A DNA stretch of 62,937 nt, counting the filler, from Octopus bimaculoides (Eukaryota): the NCBI RefSeq assembly GCF_001194135.2. It is 6 parts of 6 records of this genome, joined end to end, with 100 filler letters (N's around TTAATTAATTAA, not from the genome) between each part and the next. Parts side by side here need not be neighbours in the genome. Positions count along the whole stretch, not along the records: positions 40,932 to 54,918 come from NC_068995.1; 5 more parts are not named here. One strand, 5' to 3'. Made by a program: the position numbers and the translations under genes. The notes beneath the pieces are model-generated. The model saw only the letters and a program-made list of their open reading frames with translations. It was not told the origin of the DNA and did not search any database. Position 1 is the stretch's first letter. Each line of letters opens with the position of its first letter. This document shows positions 42,264-54,875 of the stretch, piece after piece.

Positions 42264-43685
42264 TCGCCGCTGTTTTTTTTTTCCTTTTCCGTTTAATCAT
42301 TTTGAATCTCTGTTAGACGTGAGTCGCATTGTTAATAATATGTTGATGGTCTCCCGTAAGGTTGAACCTAACTGTTGAACCTCATTGTGAAATCGTTGCG
42401 TTTTTAGTTACATTTTTTACTTGTGAAATTATGTATGTTTTATTCCCCATTTATGGGTGAAGCAGTAAGAAAAGTAAGGATGGAAAGCGAACCAGTTCCA
42501 GTGGACAGCTATGCTTCAGCCACTGGAAGAAGTTTAACTGCAGACGTGTTACAGGTTCGAGAGGTGAAGATGGAGAAAATAAGCTAAAGGAGTTCAATAG
42601 ACTTATCGAAAATATGGAATCAGTTTGAGGTTGGTCTCACCGCAAGATTTGACAGCTAGTGTAATGAAGCGGATAGTGGTATATAGAACGCTGTCCACAG
42701 CATCAAAAGAAATTCAAATAGCTACTGTGGAAGCCATAGAGGAGTGTTTGAAAGAGGTAAACAACCTCACAACATTCTATACCAGTGGGAAAAATTACGG
42801 CACAGTGGAGGTAAGATTCGAGAGCGAACAAGAAACGATAAACCACTCCACTGTGGCGCTAAGGACACCAGAGTGGGTAATTCTGCCGACTTACTGTGGC
42901 AGATGAGTGGCCAGGGTAAGAATTGGCAGAGTACCCCGGATATTGAGGAGGTGCGGCTCGTGGCATCCATTCTGTATAATATGCAGGAGGAAGCGATAGT
43001 TTTAAAAGTAACAATAACGAAAGAGGTAAACTTGTGGCGACACGGCCTCGAGGTGGCAATCCAAATCAGTTTACAAGACTTACACAAGATAGCGGAGGAG
43101 GGGAAACTTCCGGAGGAAGTGAGATTTAAGAGTGGTGGGAGAGAGAAGACCTCCAGCCTGTTACCAGTGTGGAGTAAGGGGTTACATGAGAGCAAGATAT
43201 ATGAGTGGGAAGTGTCCGGAGAAGGTAGAGGAGGAATACACGTAGTCAATAGGAAAAAAGAAAAGGAAGGAAAGGGTGGACTTACTGCCAAAAAGTCCAC
43301 TAAAGAAAAGGAAAACAAAATATAGAGGAAGCGACGCAGCAGGGGATTCCAAGAATATCAAGAAAGGAAGCCAAATTGGAAAATCAAGAGGAAATGCAGG
43401 AACAAGGAAGAACAAAAGAGCAAAAAAGAAATGATATATGGTGACATATTCGAAAAATACGGAGTTGAAAAAAGAATAACCAAAATGCAGTCGGTTATAA
43501 AAGTGAAGCTTACAATGTAATATTTTCCAGAGAGCTCCAAGACTCTTGCCATTGACAAGGAGAGATGTGCAAGATTGAGAGAATTGTTTGGAGATAAAGT
43601 AAACCTAGAAGGAGTGCGCGTGTTGTTCGATGACTTCCCGCCAGTAATACATTATGAGGACCTAATACCTTACATAAAATGGTAA
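42264..43685 (+). pseudogene. Decayed gag/ORF1-like unit 1 with conserved leader
   Basis: ATG 42480; SYASATG; GTVEVRF; degenerate zinc knuckle C-YQ-C-GVRG-Y-MRAR-Y (43159-43200); K/E-rich tail; stops and frameshifts; no RT follows. Confidence 0.65.
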
Positions 43686-43889
43686 AAAGGTAAATAAATG
43701 TTTGGAATTTTAATGACTTTAAATCTGATGCAAAAGGGAAAAAAACAGAGTAAAGAAAAAGGATATAGAAACGTTTAACTAAAATATTTAAAATGATACT
43801 GCTTGTGAATGTGGATCATGCAGCAATTTCACTTCCATTAATATAATTCAATCTTCAATCGTTCGTTCTATATTTTTTGTCCCCGTTTT

Positions 43890-44750
43890 GTTGTTCTGTC
43901 TGTTCTTGTGCCGTCCCCCACTGCGTATTAGCCTGAGTGCTCAAATAAAGAAAGGTGTAGTCGCCGCTGTTTTTCTGTTCCGTTTCCTCATTTTTGATCT
44001 CTGTTAGAGGTAAGTTATATTGTTAATTGTTTATTGAAGGTCTCCCCTCGTGGGTCTACCTTCCATTGTTGAAATTGTTGTTACTGTTTTTTGCATACGA
44101 GTTGTTGATTTGTGTTTGGTTTCTTTCCATTTAAGGGAGAACCTGAAAAGAGAGGAAGGATGGAATTTGGACAATCAGAAGGCCACAGTTATGCGGTAGC
44201 AGGTGGAAGAGAAGTGGAGTCAGTTGCGTTGGAGGATCGCGAAGTAAACGTAGAACCGAAGAAGCTAAACAGTGAAAAATCGTTGAAAGGGAAAGGAAAT
44301 ATTTTAAAATTAACACCACCAGAAGACCTAACGAACAGTGTGACAAACAGAACTGTAATATTTAAAACATTGTAGATGTCATCGAGAAAAATTGAAATTG
44401 CAAATATCGAAGATAATGTAGAATGCTTAAATGAACGCTTAATTCACCACTTTTATCACGATTGAAGAAAGTGTGGCACAGTGGGGGTGCGAACGCGAAT
44501 GAAGACGAAGCTATAAAACACACCACTGTGGCCATAAAAGCAGAAGAATGGGTACTGATGCCAACACACTGCGGATTGCCAGAGTGAGAATGAGAAAAGT
44601 GTCAACGGTAATAAACGAGACTTGGTTGGTTGTTGCTGCCACTACTGGAATTAAGATAACCAGAACTATTCATAAGATATTAAAAAAAGTGAAATTGCTT
44701 TTAAAAAAAGAAGAGAACAAAAATGATGCTAATGGAGAAAATACAGAGAA
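43890..44750 (+). pseudogene. Decayed gag/ORF1-like unit 2 with conserved leader
   Basis: ATG 44160; LTPPEDLTNSVTNRTVIFKTL and HTTVAIKAEEWVLMPTHCG align with unit 1 LVSPQDLTASVMKRIVVYRTL and HSTVALRTPEWVILPTYCG. Confidence 0.65.
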
Positions 44751-44899
44751 GAAAATTATTTATAAACTATTAGTAAAAACGTTCAAATGCCACTGCTTGA
44801 GATTGGGGCTCATGAAGCCATTTCAATCTTTATTTTTCGTTTTTCTATAATGTTTTTCTCATTATTCATTCGTGTTATGGGTTTTTTTTCCCACTTTAG

Positions 44900-45064
44900 T
44901 GTTCGGTCTGTCCTTGTGCTGTCCGCTCTGTGTAAGAGCCTAAGTGCTTAATAAAAGAATTAGTAGTCGCCGCTGTTTATTCTGTTCCGTTCAATCGTTT
45001 TTGATCCCTGTTAGACGTAAGTTGCATTGTTAATTGTCTGATTAAGGTCTCCCATAAAGGTGAA
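44900..45064 (+). repeat. Third copy of the gag-unit leader/terminal repeat
   Basis: AATAAA..TAGTCGCCGCTG..CTGTTAGACGTAAGT..GGTCTCCC, shared with 43890-44060 and (lacking the AATAAA part) 42264-42390. Confidence 0.85.
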
Positions 45065-45243
45065 CCGTTAGATTCTCTTCAACATTTAAATTTAATTTGC
45101 CAAAATATTTTCGTCACTTTGAGACCGCGACATGATCACTGAAAAAAATGGAGAAGGAATTTTTTTCAGTGATCATATTGCGGTTAAAAGCGACGAACAT
45201 ATTTTTGGCAAATTAAATTTAACTGTTGAAGTCAATCTAACGG
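45065..45243. mobile_element. Fold-back (hairpin) element, 85-bp arms, 9-nt loop
   Basis: 45065-45149 versus 45159-45243, about 88% identity by eye. Confidence 0.8.
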
Positions 45244-46151
45244 CTTTTGTGTGTTGTTAAATATGGCTTATAAACACCTTCCACGCTGCAATTGTTTTGG
45301 TATATATATATATATATATTTCGTATGTGTATTTCGTGTGCAAGATTCTTGATGTGGATACGTGTGTTGAAAGAAATACAATTAAACCTTGGGAGAGGCA
45401 TTATGCCGGTAATAAACACACGCACTGGTTCAGTCCTTTATTAATTTAATTTATATAGTTTTTTGTTAAANNNNNNNNNNNNNNNNNNNNNNNNNNNNNN
45501 NNNNNNNNNNNNNNNNNNNNNNNNNNNNNNNNNNNNNNNNNNNNNNNNNNNNNNNNNNNNNNNNNNNNNNNNNNNNNNNNNNNNNNNNNNNNNNNNNNNN
45601 NNNNNNNNNNNNNNNNNNNNNNNNNNNNNNNNNNNNNNNNNNNNNNNNNNNNNNNNNNNNNNNNNNNNNNNNNNNNNNNNNNNNNNNNNNNNNNNNNNNN
45701 NNNNNNNNNNNNNNNNNNNNNNNNNNNNNNNNNNNNNNNNNNNNNNNNNNNNNNNNNNNNNNNNNNNNNNNNNNNNNNNNNNNNNNNNNNNNNNNNNNNN
45801 NNNNNNNNNNNNNNNNNNNNNNNNNNNNNNNNNNNNNNNNNNNNNNNNNNNNNNNNNNNNNNNNNNNNNNNNNNNNNNNNNNNNNNNNNNNNNNNNNNNN
45901 NNNNNNNNNNNNNNNNNNNNNNNNNNNNNNNNNNNNNNNNNNNNNNNNNNNNNNNNNNNNNNNNNNNNNNNNNNNNNNNNNNNNNNNNNNNNNNNNNNNN
46001 NNNNNNNNNNNNNNNNNNNNNNNNNNNNNNNNNNNNNNNNNNNNNNNNNNNNNNNNNNNNNNNNNNNNNNNNNNNNNATAAGTCAATACAATGCGTTCGC
46101 ATATCTGCCAGTAGATATGGTATACTACAGAAAGCGTACAGTATTATATAT

Positions 46152-46250: not shown

Positions 46251-46827
46251 GTTTTAGAATTAATTATGGCAACTGCTCTCTAATGTTGGAGAAAAGACAC
46301 ATGTTTTTTTTTTTTTTTTAAATTAACAGCTCTGAAGAAAACCACTTTTTAAAAATATTTTCACTGTATGAAGTGTCTTTTTTTTTTATCAGAAACATTT
46401 AAATATGCAAACAACTAATATAAGATCGGAAGGTCACTGACATAATCAAAATCTCCTGTATATATTAATGCAAGGGAAACTGAGGCAATATCGAAAAAAG
46501 AAAATGTCAATCTTCACAAACTCATTTTTACAGAGAAAAATTAGAAAAAAATTGGAAAAAGAATCACGTTACAAACATTACAAACGTTGAATATGCCAAT
46601 ACACAAGTAATGTTTAATGAATGGAATAAACAACATTTGTAAAATTAAATTTACAGGAAGATGCACTAGGTGTAAAAGATGAGCATTAAATTAAAAAAAA
46701 TCAAGCGTACTGGAAATCAATTAGAAAGAGAAAATTTTCCAAAAACATTCGAACGAACAGAAAAGTAGGTGAAAATTAATAAATCTATAGAACAAATTAG
46801 AGAGAGAGAGAGAGAGAGACAGAGAGG

Positions 46828-46883
<56 letters not shown>

Positions 46884-51520: not shown

Positions 51521-51698
51521 CGAAATTGCGTCATGTTGCTATTAATTTAACAGACCCTACCACACTAAGTAGTTGACAAAATAGTAAAAACAATGCGCAA
51601 GCACGACATTAAAATATAAGATCGTGACAATTTACTCATCGTAACATTTATGTATATATANNNNNNNNNNNNNNNNNNNNNNNNNNNNNNNNNNNNNN

Positions 51699-52076: not shown

Positions 52077-52225
<149 letters not shown>

Positions 52226-52749
52226 ACAGAAGAAAAACATGTAGATAGAAAGATCAATAGGAAGAAAAAGAAAGGTAGGTAGAGAGGAGGAGTCTCGAAA
52301 GAAATAGTATACTCTATTTAAAGGCGATTACGTACAGAAGTTAATACTTCGTACAACACTGCTAGGCACGTACGGAAATCATCAACATTGCTTCATACAT
52401 TTGAACAAAATCTTTACTGCTACACCGATCCGGAGGTCACGATATCTAAAAACATTCATGATATGGCATGCTTAAATATATGAACAATTTTCTGTTTCCA
52501 TTTCATAAACATAGACCGTCAGACGAAAGGCAAGCTAATTCAAACTATTTGAGTTATAGCGAAATTATATACACAACATTTTAATCTGATAAACAATCTG
52601 TATGACAATACTTTTATTTAAGGGCACCTGTGAAAAAATCCTCTAGTTTCAAATATATTAAGGAAATATTCAGAAGGACGCAATATACGTTGAAACGTTT
52701 AACATCGAAGGAAAGATTAAAACGGAATATTTCTATTCAATTATTCACC

Positions 52750-53898
52750 ATGAAATTGATAATTGCCTTAATTGTTATATCAATCGGAAGCGCTTCTACA
52801 GAAGAAAACGACCTTCAATATGAATTACTCAGATACTATGATAAAACAATGACACCTGTTGATGCAAATGAGACCACGTTAAGCCTATATGTGACACTTA
52901 GCATAAAGAATATTATTGAATTAGACATTAAGCAAGGTATTCTAACAAGTCATCTGATGCTCGGCATAAGATGGCAGGACAATAATCTGAAATGGAATGA
53001 TTCAATGTCTAGTCGAAACCATATAGATGTTACCTTATCTAAGATTTGGTATCCTAATATTCAAATATGTAATAGTGTATCAGGTGATTTCAGTTTCGAT
53101 GTGGACAAGGAAGTCACTGTCAAATACGATGGGTTCGTTCACTTACATATAGACAAAATATTTAAAACATACTGCAGGATTAACGTTGAAAATTATCCTT
53201 TTGATCAGCACGAATGTGATATAACTGTTTGCCTTGAACATCAGATGTATATGGAGGAAACAATAGAGGACTTTGTTATCGATGTAAAATTAAAAACTAA
53301 ATCAAATCAATGGAATTTCTCTTTTGAAGAGACTGAGATGGAAAAGGATGATGTTATAGCAGCTGGTCTTATAGTTTACGGCAAGAGAAAAGTTAGCAGT
53401 GCAACAATAACAAAAATTATACCCCCAATAATGTTAACATTATTGGTCCTTTCCGTTCATGTATTGCCAGCCTCATCTGGAGAGAAAGTTTGTGCTGCAA
53501 TAACTGTTTTTCTTACAAACATCGTTTTCCTTTCTGAAACTGAAAAGATATTGGGTAATAATTCTCAGGATCCCTCTTTATATCTAATCTATCTTTTAAT
53601 TCTGACATTTGTCAGTGGATGTTCCTCTATCGAATCAGTAATTGTGTGTAAACTTTATGCCCAACAGACTGGATCAGACATCAATTTAACTCCAGAAATT
53701 GCACGAGAATCAAAAGGATCCAGAAATAGTGTTGGTGTCATTGAAAACTCAGATGAACAGAATATTAAAGTAAGAGATATAAACCTTTCTAAAAGACATT
53801 TTATAAACTATCAGAAGCTAGACAAAATATTTTTGTCAATAGTTGTTATATTCCTAGTAGTACTTTATATAATTTTTGCTTTGTCGAGTTCTTACTAA
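52750..53898 (+). CDS. Intronless atypical nAChR-like Cys-loop channel subunit, chemotactile-receptor (CR)-like, 382 aa
   Basis: CACCATG start; signal peptide MKLIIALIVISIGSAS; IWYPNI; Cys-loop C-RINVENYPFDQHE-C (53173-53217); four TM segments; GEK before M2; no vicinal CC; uninterrupted ORF. The GTG-started 40-aa extension in the ORF track is probably untranslated. Confidence 0.93.
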   Translation: MKLIIALIVISIGSASTEENDLQYELLRYYDKTMTPVDANETTLSLYVTLSIKNIIELDIKQGILTSHLMLGIRWQDNNLKWNDSMSSRNHIDVTLSKIWYPNIQICNSVSGDFSFDVDKEVTVKYDGFVHLHIDKIFKTYCRINVENYPFDQHECDITVCLEHQMYMEETIEDFVIDVKLKTKSNQWNFSFEETEMEKDDVIAAGLIVYGKRKVSSATITKIIPPIMLTLLVLSVHVLPASSGEKVCAAITVFLTNIVFLSETEKILGNNSQDPSLYLIYLLILTFVSGCSSIESVIVCKLYAQQTGSDINLTPEIARESKGSRNSVGVIENSDEQNIKVRDINLSKRHFINYQKLDKIFLSIVVIFLVVLYIIFALSSSY

Positions 53899-53929: not shown

Positions 53930-53935
53930 AATAAA
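53930..53935 (+). terminator. Candidate polyadenylation signal
   Basis: AATAAA 32 nt after the stop codon, followed by an A-rich run at 53941-53957. Confidence 0.5.
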
Positions 53936-54875
53936 TAATGAAAAGAAAAAAAAAAACAAGCATCAGAAGGCAATGCAGAATCTGCGTACACACTAAGTTA
54001 AAACAAAATTTGATTAAAAATACACCTCTTCAGCCGAATTCATAATTCAACAAAATGGCATCAAAAGTTATTTGCCTTCCTTATCGTTTACGTGTATGTC
54101 CGCCAGTTTTGAAGATAAATCAACATTTAATGATTTCGAGACACTCACCTAATGGTATTTCTGTCGAATGTGGTGAAATTCCGTTCAGCCGCTTTCATAT
54201 AATTTTGCAAACACAAAAACAAACAGACTATGTCGAGCAACTACAACAACCTACGCGCGAAAGCGAAGCGAAGGTGACTAACAAATACCTAACTGAATGC
54301 GCATAAATTCTATATTTCATCTAAGAGCCATTTGAAGAGTTGACGCAGACAAGTGAATTTTGAATACACCGGCTTTCAGCACAATCTCCAGTACGCTTTT
54401 AAAATAATGTTGTTAGGCAACATGTCTTTCTTCACCTCAAGTTTGACATAATGTGCTATAGACACTTCAAAACGACTATCTCTTGAAAGAGACACAGTCG
54501 GGTTGTCTCCTAAATCCTAAACCCCCACTTACCACGTCACACCCGCACACATACCCACAAATGATAACAGTTCAAGTTTCTACTCACCTACCTCGGTAGG
54601 CTTTCTCGCTTGCACTGCGCGACACACATACACGCCCATAAAAAATACACAAAAATATAGAATTTTTACTTTTCAGACATGTTTCTTTTGTGATGAATAC
54701 TAACGTTTCGATACATTAAAATGCACTACATTTGGGTGTTGTGTTCTTGAAGCAATCATTTCTTTTCCTAATCCTCCAGTACACTCGACACTAAAGAAGG
54801 GACACTGAAGCACATTAGAATTCCATTCAAGTGGAGCGTTATGATCTCGGTCATTTATACATTTTGGAAACTGTG

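What the first reader, a model, noticed from the sequence alone, without database searches (positions are those of the whole stretch)
52750..53898. Intact intronless chemotactile-receptor-like Cys-loop channel
Seen: a single-exon 382-aa pentameric ligand-gated channel subunit with signal peptide, 13-residue Cys-loop, four TMs and a short (about 55 aa) M3-M4 loop, intact amid decayed transposons. Known: canonical nAChR genes are multi-exon, whereas octopus carries an expanded family of intronless, acetylcholine-insensitive nAChR-derived chemotactile receptors expressed in sucker sensory epithelium that detect poorly soluble surface molecules. Inference: this is a member of that touch-taste system, possibly an uncharacterised paralogue with its own ligand.
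Basis: partly seen in the sequence, partly recalled or inferred. Interest (0 to 1): 0.92.

Follow-up and report, generated by a model that had tools for sequence, protein, structure and literature searches.

The report
Octopus chemotactile receptor gene, known family

Summary
Window 52750-53898 (+) is one uninterrupted 382-codon frame. It encodes a Cys-loop channel subunit with a signal-like N-terminus, a 13-residue Cys-loop (C142-C156), four TM helices and a roughly 50-aa M3-M4 loop.

The piece is Octopus bimaculoides chromosome CM046615.1, 38,387,352-38,388,500. The gene lies in a same-strand array of single-exon paralogues about 430 kb long, which includes CRT1-like genes.

Evidence for chemotactile receptor (CR) membership:
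- The best solved-structure match is octopus CRT1 (E 1e-50, against about 1e-24 for nAChRs).
- An NJ tree puts it in a 29-sequence clade with CRT1 and squid CRB1 (bootstrap 99/100).
- Every ACh-box residue is gone (M70, C107, E163, loop C shortened by 8 residues with no Cys-Cys).
- It carries a cysteine pair found only in the CR clade (C107/C161).

Pore motifs are intact (GEK, 9' Leu). Against the O. vulgaris orthologue, M1-M3 has dN/dS 0.2-0.3 and the ligand-binding domain about 1.0-1.3.

It is only about 29% identical to CRT1. At positions matching CRT1's ligand contacts it has S51, M70, H133, D135, E163 and H164, so a different ligand is plausible.

Expression and ligand were not testable. 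"Decayed transposons" was not confirmed.

The parts
52750..53898 (+). Complete single-exon coding sequence (382 codons plus TAA) of a chemotactile-receptor-family subunit
52750..52797 (+). Signal-peptide-like N-terminus (aa 1-16, MKLIIALIVISIGSAS)
   Evidence: Sequence shown. The mature N-terminus of CRT1 aligns at residue 13. No predictor was run.
52798..53391 (+). Extracellular ligand-binding domain (aa 17-214). The ACh-box positions are M70, C107 and E163, and loop C is shortened by 8 residues. Positions aligned to the CRT1 pocket are S51, M70, H133, D135, E163 and H164.
   Evidence: dN/dS 1.0-1.3 against O. vulgaris
53173..53217 (+). Cys-loop C142-C156 (CRINVENYPFDQHEC, 13 residues between the cysteines, YPFD motif)
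53398..53463 (+). M1 helix (aa 217-238), preceded by the pre-M1 motif KRK
53470..53562 (+). M2 pore helix (aa 241-271), with the GEK motif (-1' Glu E245) and 9' Leu L255
53578..53670 (+). M3 helix (aa 277-307)
53671..53820 (+). Short intracellular M3-M4 segment (aa 308-357; disordered in the model up to about 344, then helical)
53821..53895 (+). M4 helix and C-terminus (aa 358-382)
52630..52749 (+). 5' flank conserved with both O. vulgaris copies. The last 30 nt or so before the ATG are also recognisable in paralogues. Probable 5' UTR or proximal promoter (inferred).
53930..53935 (+). AATAAA 32 nt after the stop, followed by an A-rich run (53940-53959). Possible poly(A) signal. Not conserved in O. 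vulgaris or in paralogues.

Best explanation
The gene encodes a subunit of a pentameric, cation-selective ligand-gated channel of the cephalopod chemotactile receptor (CR) family, which derives from nicotinic receptors. It belongs to an octopus-specific subclade of that family, sister to the group holding CRT1 and squid CRB1.

Proposed mechanism:
1. Five subunits, alike or mixed with other CRs, form a pore lined by M2.
2. An agonist that is not acetylcholine binds at a subunit interface in the extracellular beta-sandwich.
3. The Cys-loop (YPFD) and the M2-M3 linker pass the change to the 9' Leu gate.
4. Cations enter and depolarise the sensory cell.

Shown here: the architecture, clade membership, loss of the ACh site, intact pore and coupling motifs, the single-exon structure, the position in the CR array, and purifying selection on the pore domain with fast evolution of the ligand-binding domain.

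Inferred: expression in sucker or arm sensory epithelium, the nature of the ligand, and whether the channel is a homomer or a heteromer.

The residues aligned to CRT1's hydrophobic ligand contacts are S51, M70, H133, D135, E163 and H164. Its agonist is therefore probably not CRT1's.
For: Source and integrity
- Intact 382-aa ORF, far longer than chance gives.
- The source is O. bimaculoides GCA_001194135.2, CM046615.1:38,387,352-38,388,500.

Similarity and phylogeny
- In the PDB sequence search, CRT1 scores E 1.3e-50 over residues 13-377 and squid CRB1 8e-27. The best nAChR scores 2e-24.
- In an NJ tree of 136 sequences the CR clade of 29 has bootstrap 99/100 and the window's subclade 100/100.

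Ligand site
- ACh-box columns: TrpD is M70, TyrA is C107, TrpB is E163. Loop C is 8 residues shorter and has neither the Cys-Cys nor the tyrosines.
- The cysteine pair C107/C161 occurs in 25 of 29 CR-clade sequences and in none of the 107 outside it.

Pore and fold
- Pore motifs SGEK (E245), L255 (9') and the YPFD Cys-loop are conserved.
- The fold is the nAChR type.

Genomic setting
- Array, all on the + strand. The five full-length genes are single exons; P0015 is a truncated 296-aa model spanning 2.5 kb. Starts: P0025 37,956,802; P0020 38,047,762 (the CRT1-like genes, 50% and 60% identical to CRT1); P0015 38,153,401; P0008 38,171,304; P0005 38,362,058; this gene 38,387,352.

Selection, against the O. 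vulgaris copies
- M1-M3 has dN/dS 0.20 and 0.30 (Fisher p = 0.002 and 0.04).
- The ligand-binding domain has dN/dS 1.0 and 1.3.
- Non-synonymous change per site differs between the two domains at p = 1e-7.
- A sister copy 6.8 kb downstream, 91% identical in DNA, carries 5 indels (4 of them frameshifting) and 3 stops. It shows what unconstrained decay looks like at this locus.

Literature
- CRs are intronless, tandemly clustered, non-selective cation channels with positively selected pockets, and number up to 26 in this species (PMC11526382).
Against: - There is no expression evidence. The exact protein occurs on only one contig in the collection, the genome itself.
- Whole-gene dN/dS is 0.83-1.05, and the ligand-binding domain cannot be told apart from neutral evolution (Fisher p = 0.46-1.0).
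- Identity to CRT1 is only about 29%, similar to its identity to an alpha-type nAChR (28.6%). Membership therefore rests on the tree, shared indels and shared cysteines, not on raw identity.
- The tree is distance-based only. The window's subclade falls outside the smallest group that holds both CRT1 and CRB1.
- The aligned pocket is much more polar than the hydrophobic pocket described for CRs (bioRxiv 10.1101/2025.10.28.685082).
- I could not match the gene to the published list of 26 CRs, because the primary papers are not held.
Confidence: 0.8

Rival explanations
1. The gene is under relaxed constraint and on its way to becoming a pseudogene. It is still open but no longer expressed or needed, as in the birth-and-death turnover typical of chemoreceptor arrays.
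For: Whole-gene dN/dS is 0.83-1.05 and ligand-binding-domain dN/dS is about 1.0-1.3. The adjacent copy in L001 is already a pseudogene, and more pseudogene fragments lie in L003 and L004. No transcript-derived contig carries the exact protein.
Against: M1-M3 has dN/dS 0.2-0.3, significantly below 1. All coupling and pore motifs and the structural cysteines are intact. The ORF has no lesion, whereas the sister copy at 9% DNA divergence has eight. The neighbouring orthologue pair P0005/P0004 shows the same pattern, with the ligand-binding domain evolving faster than the pore. This fits the published diversifying selection on CR pockets (PMC11526382).
Confidence: 0.1
2. It is a CR-family subunit that does not form a receptor on its own. 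It serves as a structural or modulatory partner in heteromeric CR channels, or works in a tissue other than the sucker epithelium.
For: CR subunits are reported to combine into many multimeric complexes, and only some express as homomers (bioRxiv 10.1101/2025.03.03.641191). The pocket positions differ strongly from those of CRT1. D135 and H164 are nearly fixed or fixed across the subclade, which suggests a shared structural role.
Against: Nothing in the sequence separates homomer-forming from heteromer-only subunits. Several pocket-aligned positions (70, 133, 163) vary among paralogues and between orthologues, as expected of specificity determinants.
Confidence: 0.08
3. It is an ordinary acetylcholine-gated nicotinic receptor subunit, as public annotation names its relatives ('unc-29-like', 'delta-like').
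For: The Pfam domains and the fold are those of nAChRs. Relatives are named as AChR subunits in RefSeq.
Against: All aromatic-box residues and the loop-C Cys-Cys are absent, on both the principal and the complementary face. It groups with CRT1 and CRB1 at 99% bootstrap, away from the alpha-type sequences. It is a single exon with a roughly 50-aa M3-M4 segment. The RefSeq names are automatic similarity labels.
Confidence: 0.02

Closest known systems
Octopus bimaculoides CRT1 (formerly CR518; PDB 8EIS, 9E6B-D, 9YI4)
   Same: It shares the chromosome and the gene array with CRT1-like genes. Both are single-exon genes. The length is similar, and the alignment runs collinearly over residues 13-377. 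Both have the shortened loop C, lack the ACh box, carry the C107/C161-type cysteine pair, have the SGEK / 9' Leu / 11' Asn pore, and have a short M3-M4 segment.
   Different: Identity is only about 29%, and the gene belongs to a separate subclade. CRT1 positions Y39, Y58, E104, W122, F124, A152 and L153 align to S51, M70, S115, H133, D135, E163 and H164; L191 falls in a gap. The vestibule Glu tied to CRT1's Ca2+ permeation is Ser here. No ligand is known.
O. vulgaris 'acetylcholine receptor subunit beta-type unc-29-like' (P0002; OX597828.1), the positional orthologue
   Same: It is 78% identical and 382 aa long. Gene order is conserved: the P0005/P0004 orthologue, then this gene, then a second copy.
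   Different: O. vulgaris keeps two intact copies that are 95% identical in DNA. In O. bimaculoides the second copy is a pseudogene. The ligand-binding domains differ a good deal (dN 0.18), including pocket-aligned positions 51, 70 and 163.
Squid CRB1 (PDB 8EIZ)
   Same: It lies in the same 99%-supported clade, and both have the shortened loop C and lack the ACh box.
   Different: Identity is 24%. CRB1 lacks the C/C pair and has Y/Y instead. It groups with CRT1 rather than with this subclade in the NJ tree.
Canonical nicotinic acetylcholine receptor subunits (for example alpha7, beta2, muscle gamma/delta)
   Same: The fold, the Cys-loop, the four-TM topology, the GEK cation-selectivity motif and the 9' Leu gate are shared.
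   Different: There are no ACh-binding residues. Loop C is 8 residues shorter. The gene is intronless. The M3-M4 loop is about 50 aa. An extra cysteine pair is present.

Membership tests
Cephalopod chemotactile receptors (CRs) | nAChR-type Cys-loop pentameric channel subunit architecture | tested here: met
   Pfam LBD 5e-32 plus the TM domain; Cys-loop x13; beta-sandwich plus four helices; Foldseek hits to nAChRs and CRT1 at about 1e-21.
Cephalopod chemotactile receptors (CRs) | Falls in the clade containing functionally defined CRs (CRT1, CRB1), apart from ACh-gated subunits | tested here: met
   NJ tree with 100 bootstraps: the 29-sequence clade containing CRT1, CRB1 and this gene has 99/100. 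Caveats: distance method only, and the subclade is sister to the CRT1+CRB1 group.
Cephalopod chemotactile receptors (CRs) | Loss of the acetylcholine-binding residues | tested here: met
   M70, C107 and E163 stand at the TrpD, TyrA and TrpB columns. Loop C has an 8-residue deletion and no Cys-Cys or Tyr.
Cephalopod chemotactile receptors (CRs) | Intronless coding sequence | tested here: met
   One ORF collinear with the CRT1 protein over residues 13-377 and with 381-383-aa homologues. The called gene range equals 3 x 383 nt. Introns in the UTRs cannot be excluded.
Cephalopod chemotactile receptors (CRs) | Located in a tandem cluster of CR genes | tested here: met
   Six same-strand CR-clade genes, including CRT1-like P0020 and P0025, lie within about 430 kb of CM046615.1; five are single exons and P0015 is a truncated 2.5-kb model.
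Cephalopod chemotactile receptors (CRs) | Hydrophobic orthosteric pocket like that described for CRT1 and the CR consensus | tested here: inconclusive
   The aligned positions are S51, M70, H133, D135, E163 and H164, which are more polar. The mapping rests on a 29%-identity alignment, and no pentamer model was available to show which side chains line the pocket.
Cephalopod chemotactile receptors (CRs) | Expression in sucker or arm sensory epithelium | not testable with these tools
   No RNA-seq mapping was possible. The exact protein is seen only on the genome contig.
Cephalopod chemotactile receptors (CRs) | Gated by poorly soluble non-ACh agonists and insensitive to ACh | not testable with these tools
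   This needs electrophysiology.
Cephalopod chemotactile receptors (CRs) | Is one of the up to 26 CRs already listed for O. bimaculoides | not testable with these tools
   The primary papers and their gene tables are not held. The source names for the window's own protein are masked.
Canonical ACh-gated nicotinic receptor subunits | Aromatic box (TyrA, TrpB, TyrC1, TyrC2, TrpD), with the loop-C Cys-Cys in alpha subunits | tested here: not met
   none of these residues is present, on either the principal or the complementary face.
Canonical ACh-gated nicotinic receptor subunits | Multi-exon gene with a long M3-M4 cytoplasmic loop | tested here: not met
   Single-exon coding sequence and a roughly 50-aa M3-M4 segment. 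That canonical genes are multi-exon is established knowledge and was not re-tested here.

The most novel reading that the evidence does not exclude
The octopus-specific subclade that holds this gene may be a functionally distinct branch of the chemotactile receptors. It comprises at least 8 O. bimaculoides genes or gene models. H164 and C161 are invariant in it and D135 is nearly fixed, while positions 70, 133 and 163 vary. Its pocket would be partly polar or ionisable (His/Asp/Glu). It could detect polar, charged, metal-ion or pH-dependent cues rather than the hydrophobic terpenoids, steroids and beta-carbolines known for CRT1. The very fast ligand-binding-domain divergence between O. bimaculoides and O. 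vulgaris (dN/dS 1.0-1.3, twice the dN of the neighbouring orthologue pair) would then reflect species-specific retuning.
Probability: 0.2. Interest if true: 0.45.

Novelty: already known. Interest (0 to 1): 0.2.

Why it matters
This locus adds little as a discovery. The CR family is published for this species, together with its origin from nicotinic receptors, its intronless genes, its tandem clusters and its positively selected pockets. The gene is already called in the public assembly.

Its residual value is as a candidate for de-orphanisation. It represents a CRT1-distant subclade whose pocket-aligned residues are polar. It also has an unusually clean natural control: an intact gene beside a decayed twin, with two intact twins in O. 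vulgaris. That pair could be used to study birth-and-death and ligand retuning in a young chemoreceptor family.

Tried and rejected
- **Published CR list.** I tried to match the gene to the 26 published CRs. van Giesen 2020, Allard 2023, Kang 2023 and the Current Biology primer are not held. The supplements of MolluscaGenes and of the hectocotylus preprint are not held either. A text search for CR518/CR840 gave only the 2025 preprint, which has no sequences.
- **Profile search.** A search meant to list all O. bimaculoides CRs scored only 8000 word-sharing candidates and missed even P0020 and P0025. It is useless as a census.
- **Foldseek.** It confirms the fold but cannot separate CRs from nAChRs; alpha7 and CRT1 are tied at about 1e-21.
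- **Retrogene poly(A) relic.** An AATAAA followed by an A-rich run lies just past the stop. It is absent from both O. vulgaris copies and from the paralogues, so I do not count it as evidence of retroposition.
- **Transposons around the gene.** Neighbouring ORFs have no significant Pfam match and no transposon domain, so 'decayed transposons' stays unverified.
- **Canonical nAChR reading.** Rejected on residue and tree evidence.

Full report
**Observation**

Window 52750-53898 (+) is a single open frame of 382 codons ending in TAA. The mechanical ORF begins at an upstream GTG (52630). All homologues begin MKLI, so the start is the ATG at 52750. In 200 shuffles of the 14-kb piece the longest Met-initiated ORF was 175 aa, with a mean of 91.

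The product matches Pfam Neur_chan_LBD (5e-32). It matches Neur_chan_memb more weakly (1e-5, just under the gathering score). It has a C142-x13-C156 Cys-loop containing YPFD.

An AlphaFold2 model built on 16 homologues has moderate confidence (mean pLDDT 65.6). It shows an N-terminal helix, a ten-strand beta-sandwich and helices at 217-238, 241-271, 277-307 and 345-381. Residues 301-353 have low confidence.

**Source and setting**

The exact protein is called on Octopus bimaculoides assembly GCA_001194135.2, chromosome CM046615.1, 38,387,352-38,388,500.

Six CR-type genes lie on the same strand. Five are single exons; the P0015 model is truncated (296 aa over 2.5 kb). Their start coordinates are:

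| Gene | Start on CM046615.1 |
|---|---|
| P0025 | 37,956,802 |
| P0020 | 38,047,762 |
| P0015 | 38,153,401 |
| P0008 | 38,171,304 |
| P0005 | 38,362,058 |
| window gene | 38,387,352 |

P0020 and P0025 are 60% and 50% identical to the solved receptor CRT1. The gene therefore sits inside one array, about 430 kb long, that also holds CRT1-like genes.

Gene order is conserved in O. vulgaris: the P0004 orthologue of P0005, then two 382-aa copies 9.7 kb apart.

**What it is**

- **Sequence similarity.** Against all PDB sequences the best matches are octopus CRT1 (E 1.3e-50, aligned 13-377) and squid CRB1 (8e-27). Nicotinic subunits start at 2e-24.
- **Phylogeny.** I transcribed the CRT1 and CRB1 sequences from that alignment printout. 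I aligned them with the 16 close homologues and the single-domain-length representatives from an exhaustive HMMER search. In an NJ tree of these 136 sequences, rooted on five alpha-type sequences with a loop-C Cys-Cys, this gene, CRT1 and CRB1 fall in one clade of 29 (bootstrap 99/100). The window's subclade of 17 has 100/100 and is sister to the CRT1+CRB1 group. Every named member of that subclade comes from Octopus.
- **Loss of the ACh site.** The alignment shows this column by column. The loop-D Trp is M70, the loop-A Tyr is C107 and the loop-B Trp is E163. Loop C is eight residues shorter, with no vicinal cysteines or tyrosines.
- **A shared derived character.** The cysteine pair at C107/C161 is present in 25 of 29 CR-clade sequences, jointly absent in the other four, and absent in all 107 sequences outside the clade. 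I infer a CR-specific disulfide, but this is not shown.
- **Intact channel machinery.** Pre-M1 KRK, the M1 Pro, SGEK with -1' Glu (E245), 9' Leu (L255) and 11' Asn as in CRT1 are all present.
- **Fold.** Foldseek confirms the nAChR/CR fold but cannot rank CRT1 above alpha7.

**Is it alive?**

Whole-gene dN/dS against the two O. vulgaris copies is 0.83 and 1.05, which looks neutral. The rate is strongly uneven across the protein, however:

| Region | dN/dS (copy A / copy B) | Fisher test against its own synonymous rate |
|---|---|---|
| M1-M3 (aa 215-305) | 0.20 / 0.30 | p = 0.002 / 0.04 |
| Ligand-binding domain (aa 17-214) | 1.0 / 1.3 | p = 1.0 / 0.46 |

Non-synonymous change per site differs between the two regions at p = 1e-7.

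The neighbouring orthologue pair P0005/P0004 shows the same pattern in milder form, with the ligand-binding domain at 0.70 and M1-M3 at 0.36.

A sister copy lies 6.8 kb downstream, outside the piece, at L001:17967-19054. It is 91% identical in DNA and carries five indels, four of them frameshifting, plus three in-frame stops. Unconstrained copies at this locus therefore break quickly, and this one has not.

I conclude that the pore has been maintained by selection while the ligand-binding domain diverged fast. This agrees with the published positive selection on CR pockets (PMC11526382). A very recent loss of function cannot be excluded.

**How it differs from the characterised receptor**

Identity to CRT1 is about 29%. 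The paper numbering of CRT1 was recovered exactly from the PDB chain, with all 8 test residues matching. The CRT1 ligand-contact and vestibule residues align as follows (the mapping for positions 39, 58, 122, 124, 152 and 153 was hand-checked against the HMMER alignment):

| CRT1 residue | Window residue |
|---|---|
| Y39 | S51 |
| Y58 | M70 |
| E104 | S115 |
| W122 | H133 |
| F124 | D135 |
| A152 | E163 |
| L153 | H164 |
| L191 | gap |

Within the 16-sequence subclade, C161 and H164 are invariant and D135 is almost so. Positions 70, 133 and 163 vary among paralogues, and positions 51, 70 and 163 differ even from O. vulgaris. This makes a ligand different from CRT1's plausible. Without a pentamer model it is not proven that these side chains line the pocket.

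**Comparison with what is known**

The literature held in the library describes CRs as:
- nAChR-derived homo- or heteropentameric non-selective cation channels;
- activated by poorly soluble molecules rather than ACh;
- intronless and in tandem clusters;
- with positively selected pockets;
- numbering up to 26 in O. bimaculoides, of which CRT1 and CR840 were the first cloned.

Every sequence-testable item on this list is met here. Expression and pharmacology could not be tested. Whether this gene is one of the 26 listed could not be checked, because the primary papers and tables are not held.

**Verdict**

The finding is a member of an already described family, in the species where that family was catalogued. 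I rate the novelty 'already known' and the interest 0.2.

The most novel reading still open is that this CRT1-distant subclade, with His, Asp and Glu at pocket-aligned positions, senses a different chemical class. I give that a probability of about 0.2.

**Methodological caveats**

- The tree is distance-based.
- The representative sequences carry no labels apart from the ten I looked up.
- CRT1 and CRB1 were used as partial sequences.
- dN/dS values are pairwise Nei-Gojobori estimates. They may be affected by gene conversion between the two O. vulgaris copies, which are 95% identical.

Noticed in passing
L001:17967-19054 (CM046615.1, about 6.8 kb downstream of the gene; beyond the end of the window piece): A decayed twin of the window gene. 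It is 91% identical in DNA and has five indels (+23, +5, -1, -35, -5) and three in-frame stops. By position it corresponds to the second intact copy in O. vulgaris.
   Followed up: yes
L002:10001-11149 and L002:19682-20830 (O. vulgaris OX597828.1): O. vulgaris has two intact 382-aa copies that are 95% identical in DNA (dS 0.048). That is closer than either is to the O. bimaculoides gene (dS 0.11-0.15). It suggests gene conversion or a lineage-specific re-duplication.
   Followed up: partly
L003:13010-14104; L004:3504-4362 and 1729-2043: Further frame-broken CR fragments lie next to the intact paralogues P0005 and P0008. The array is a mix of live genes and pseudogenes.
   Followed up: no
window residues C107 and C161 (nt 53068-53070 and 53230-53232): A cysteine pair occupies the loop-A Tyr column and a loop-B column. 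It is present in 25 of 29 CR-clade sequences, jointly absent in the other 4, and absent in all 107 non-CR sequences. It is probably a clade-specific disulfide beside the binding pocket.
   Followed up: partly
window 52078-52223 and 46799-46881: Long (AG)n microsatellites. The nearer one ends about 530 bp upstream of the start codon. They produce the spurious 'SLSLSL' ORFs on the minus strand.
   Followed up: no
window 42264-42368, 43726-44046, 44724-45066; palindrome 45065-45243: A diverged dispersed or tandem repeat (72-78% identity; 2-3 copies, 77 to about 330 nt) and a 179-nt self-complementary element that looks like a MITE. The overlapping ORFs (42625-43325, 44112-44375) share a short peptide motif but have no significant Pfam match.
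   Followed up: partly
window 45471-46077 and 51661-51698: Runs of N (assembly gaps) inside the piece. The long 'X' ORFs there are artefacts.
   Followed up: yes
window 52720-52749 (and the equivalent positions in L002, L003, L004): A short motif just upstream of the ATG (GGAATATTTC...ATT.ATCA(C/T)CATG) is recognisable in both O. vulgaris copies and, in degraded form, in paralogues P0005 and P0008. It may be a shared 5' UTR or core-promoter element of the array.
   Followed up: no
L005:10001-12552 (P0015): The public model for this array member is a 296-aa product spread over 2.5 kb with an aberrant C-terminus. It is probably a mis-modelled or truncated CR gene, not a true spliced one.
   Followed up: no
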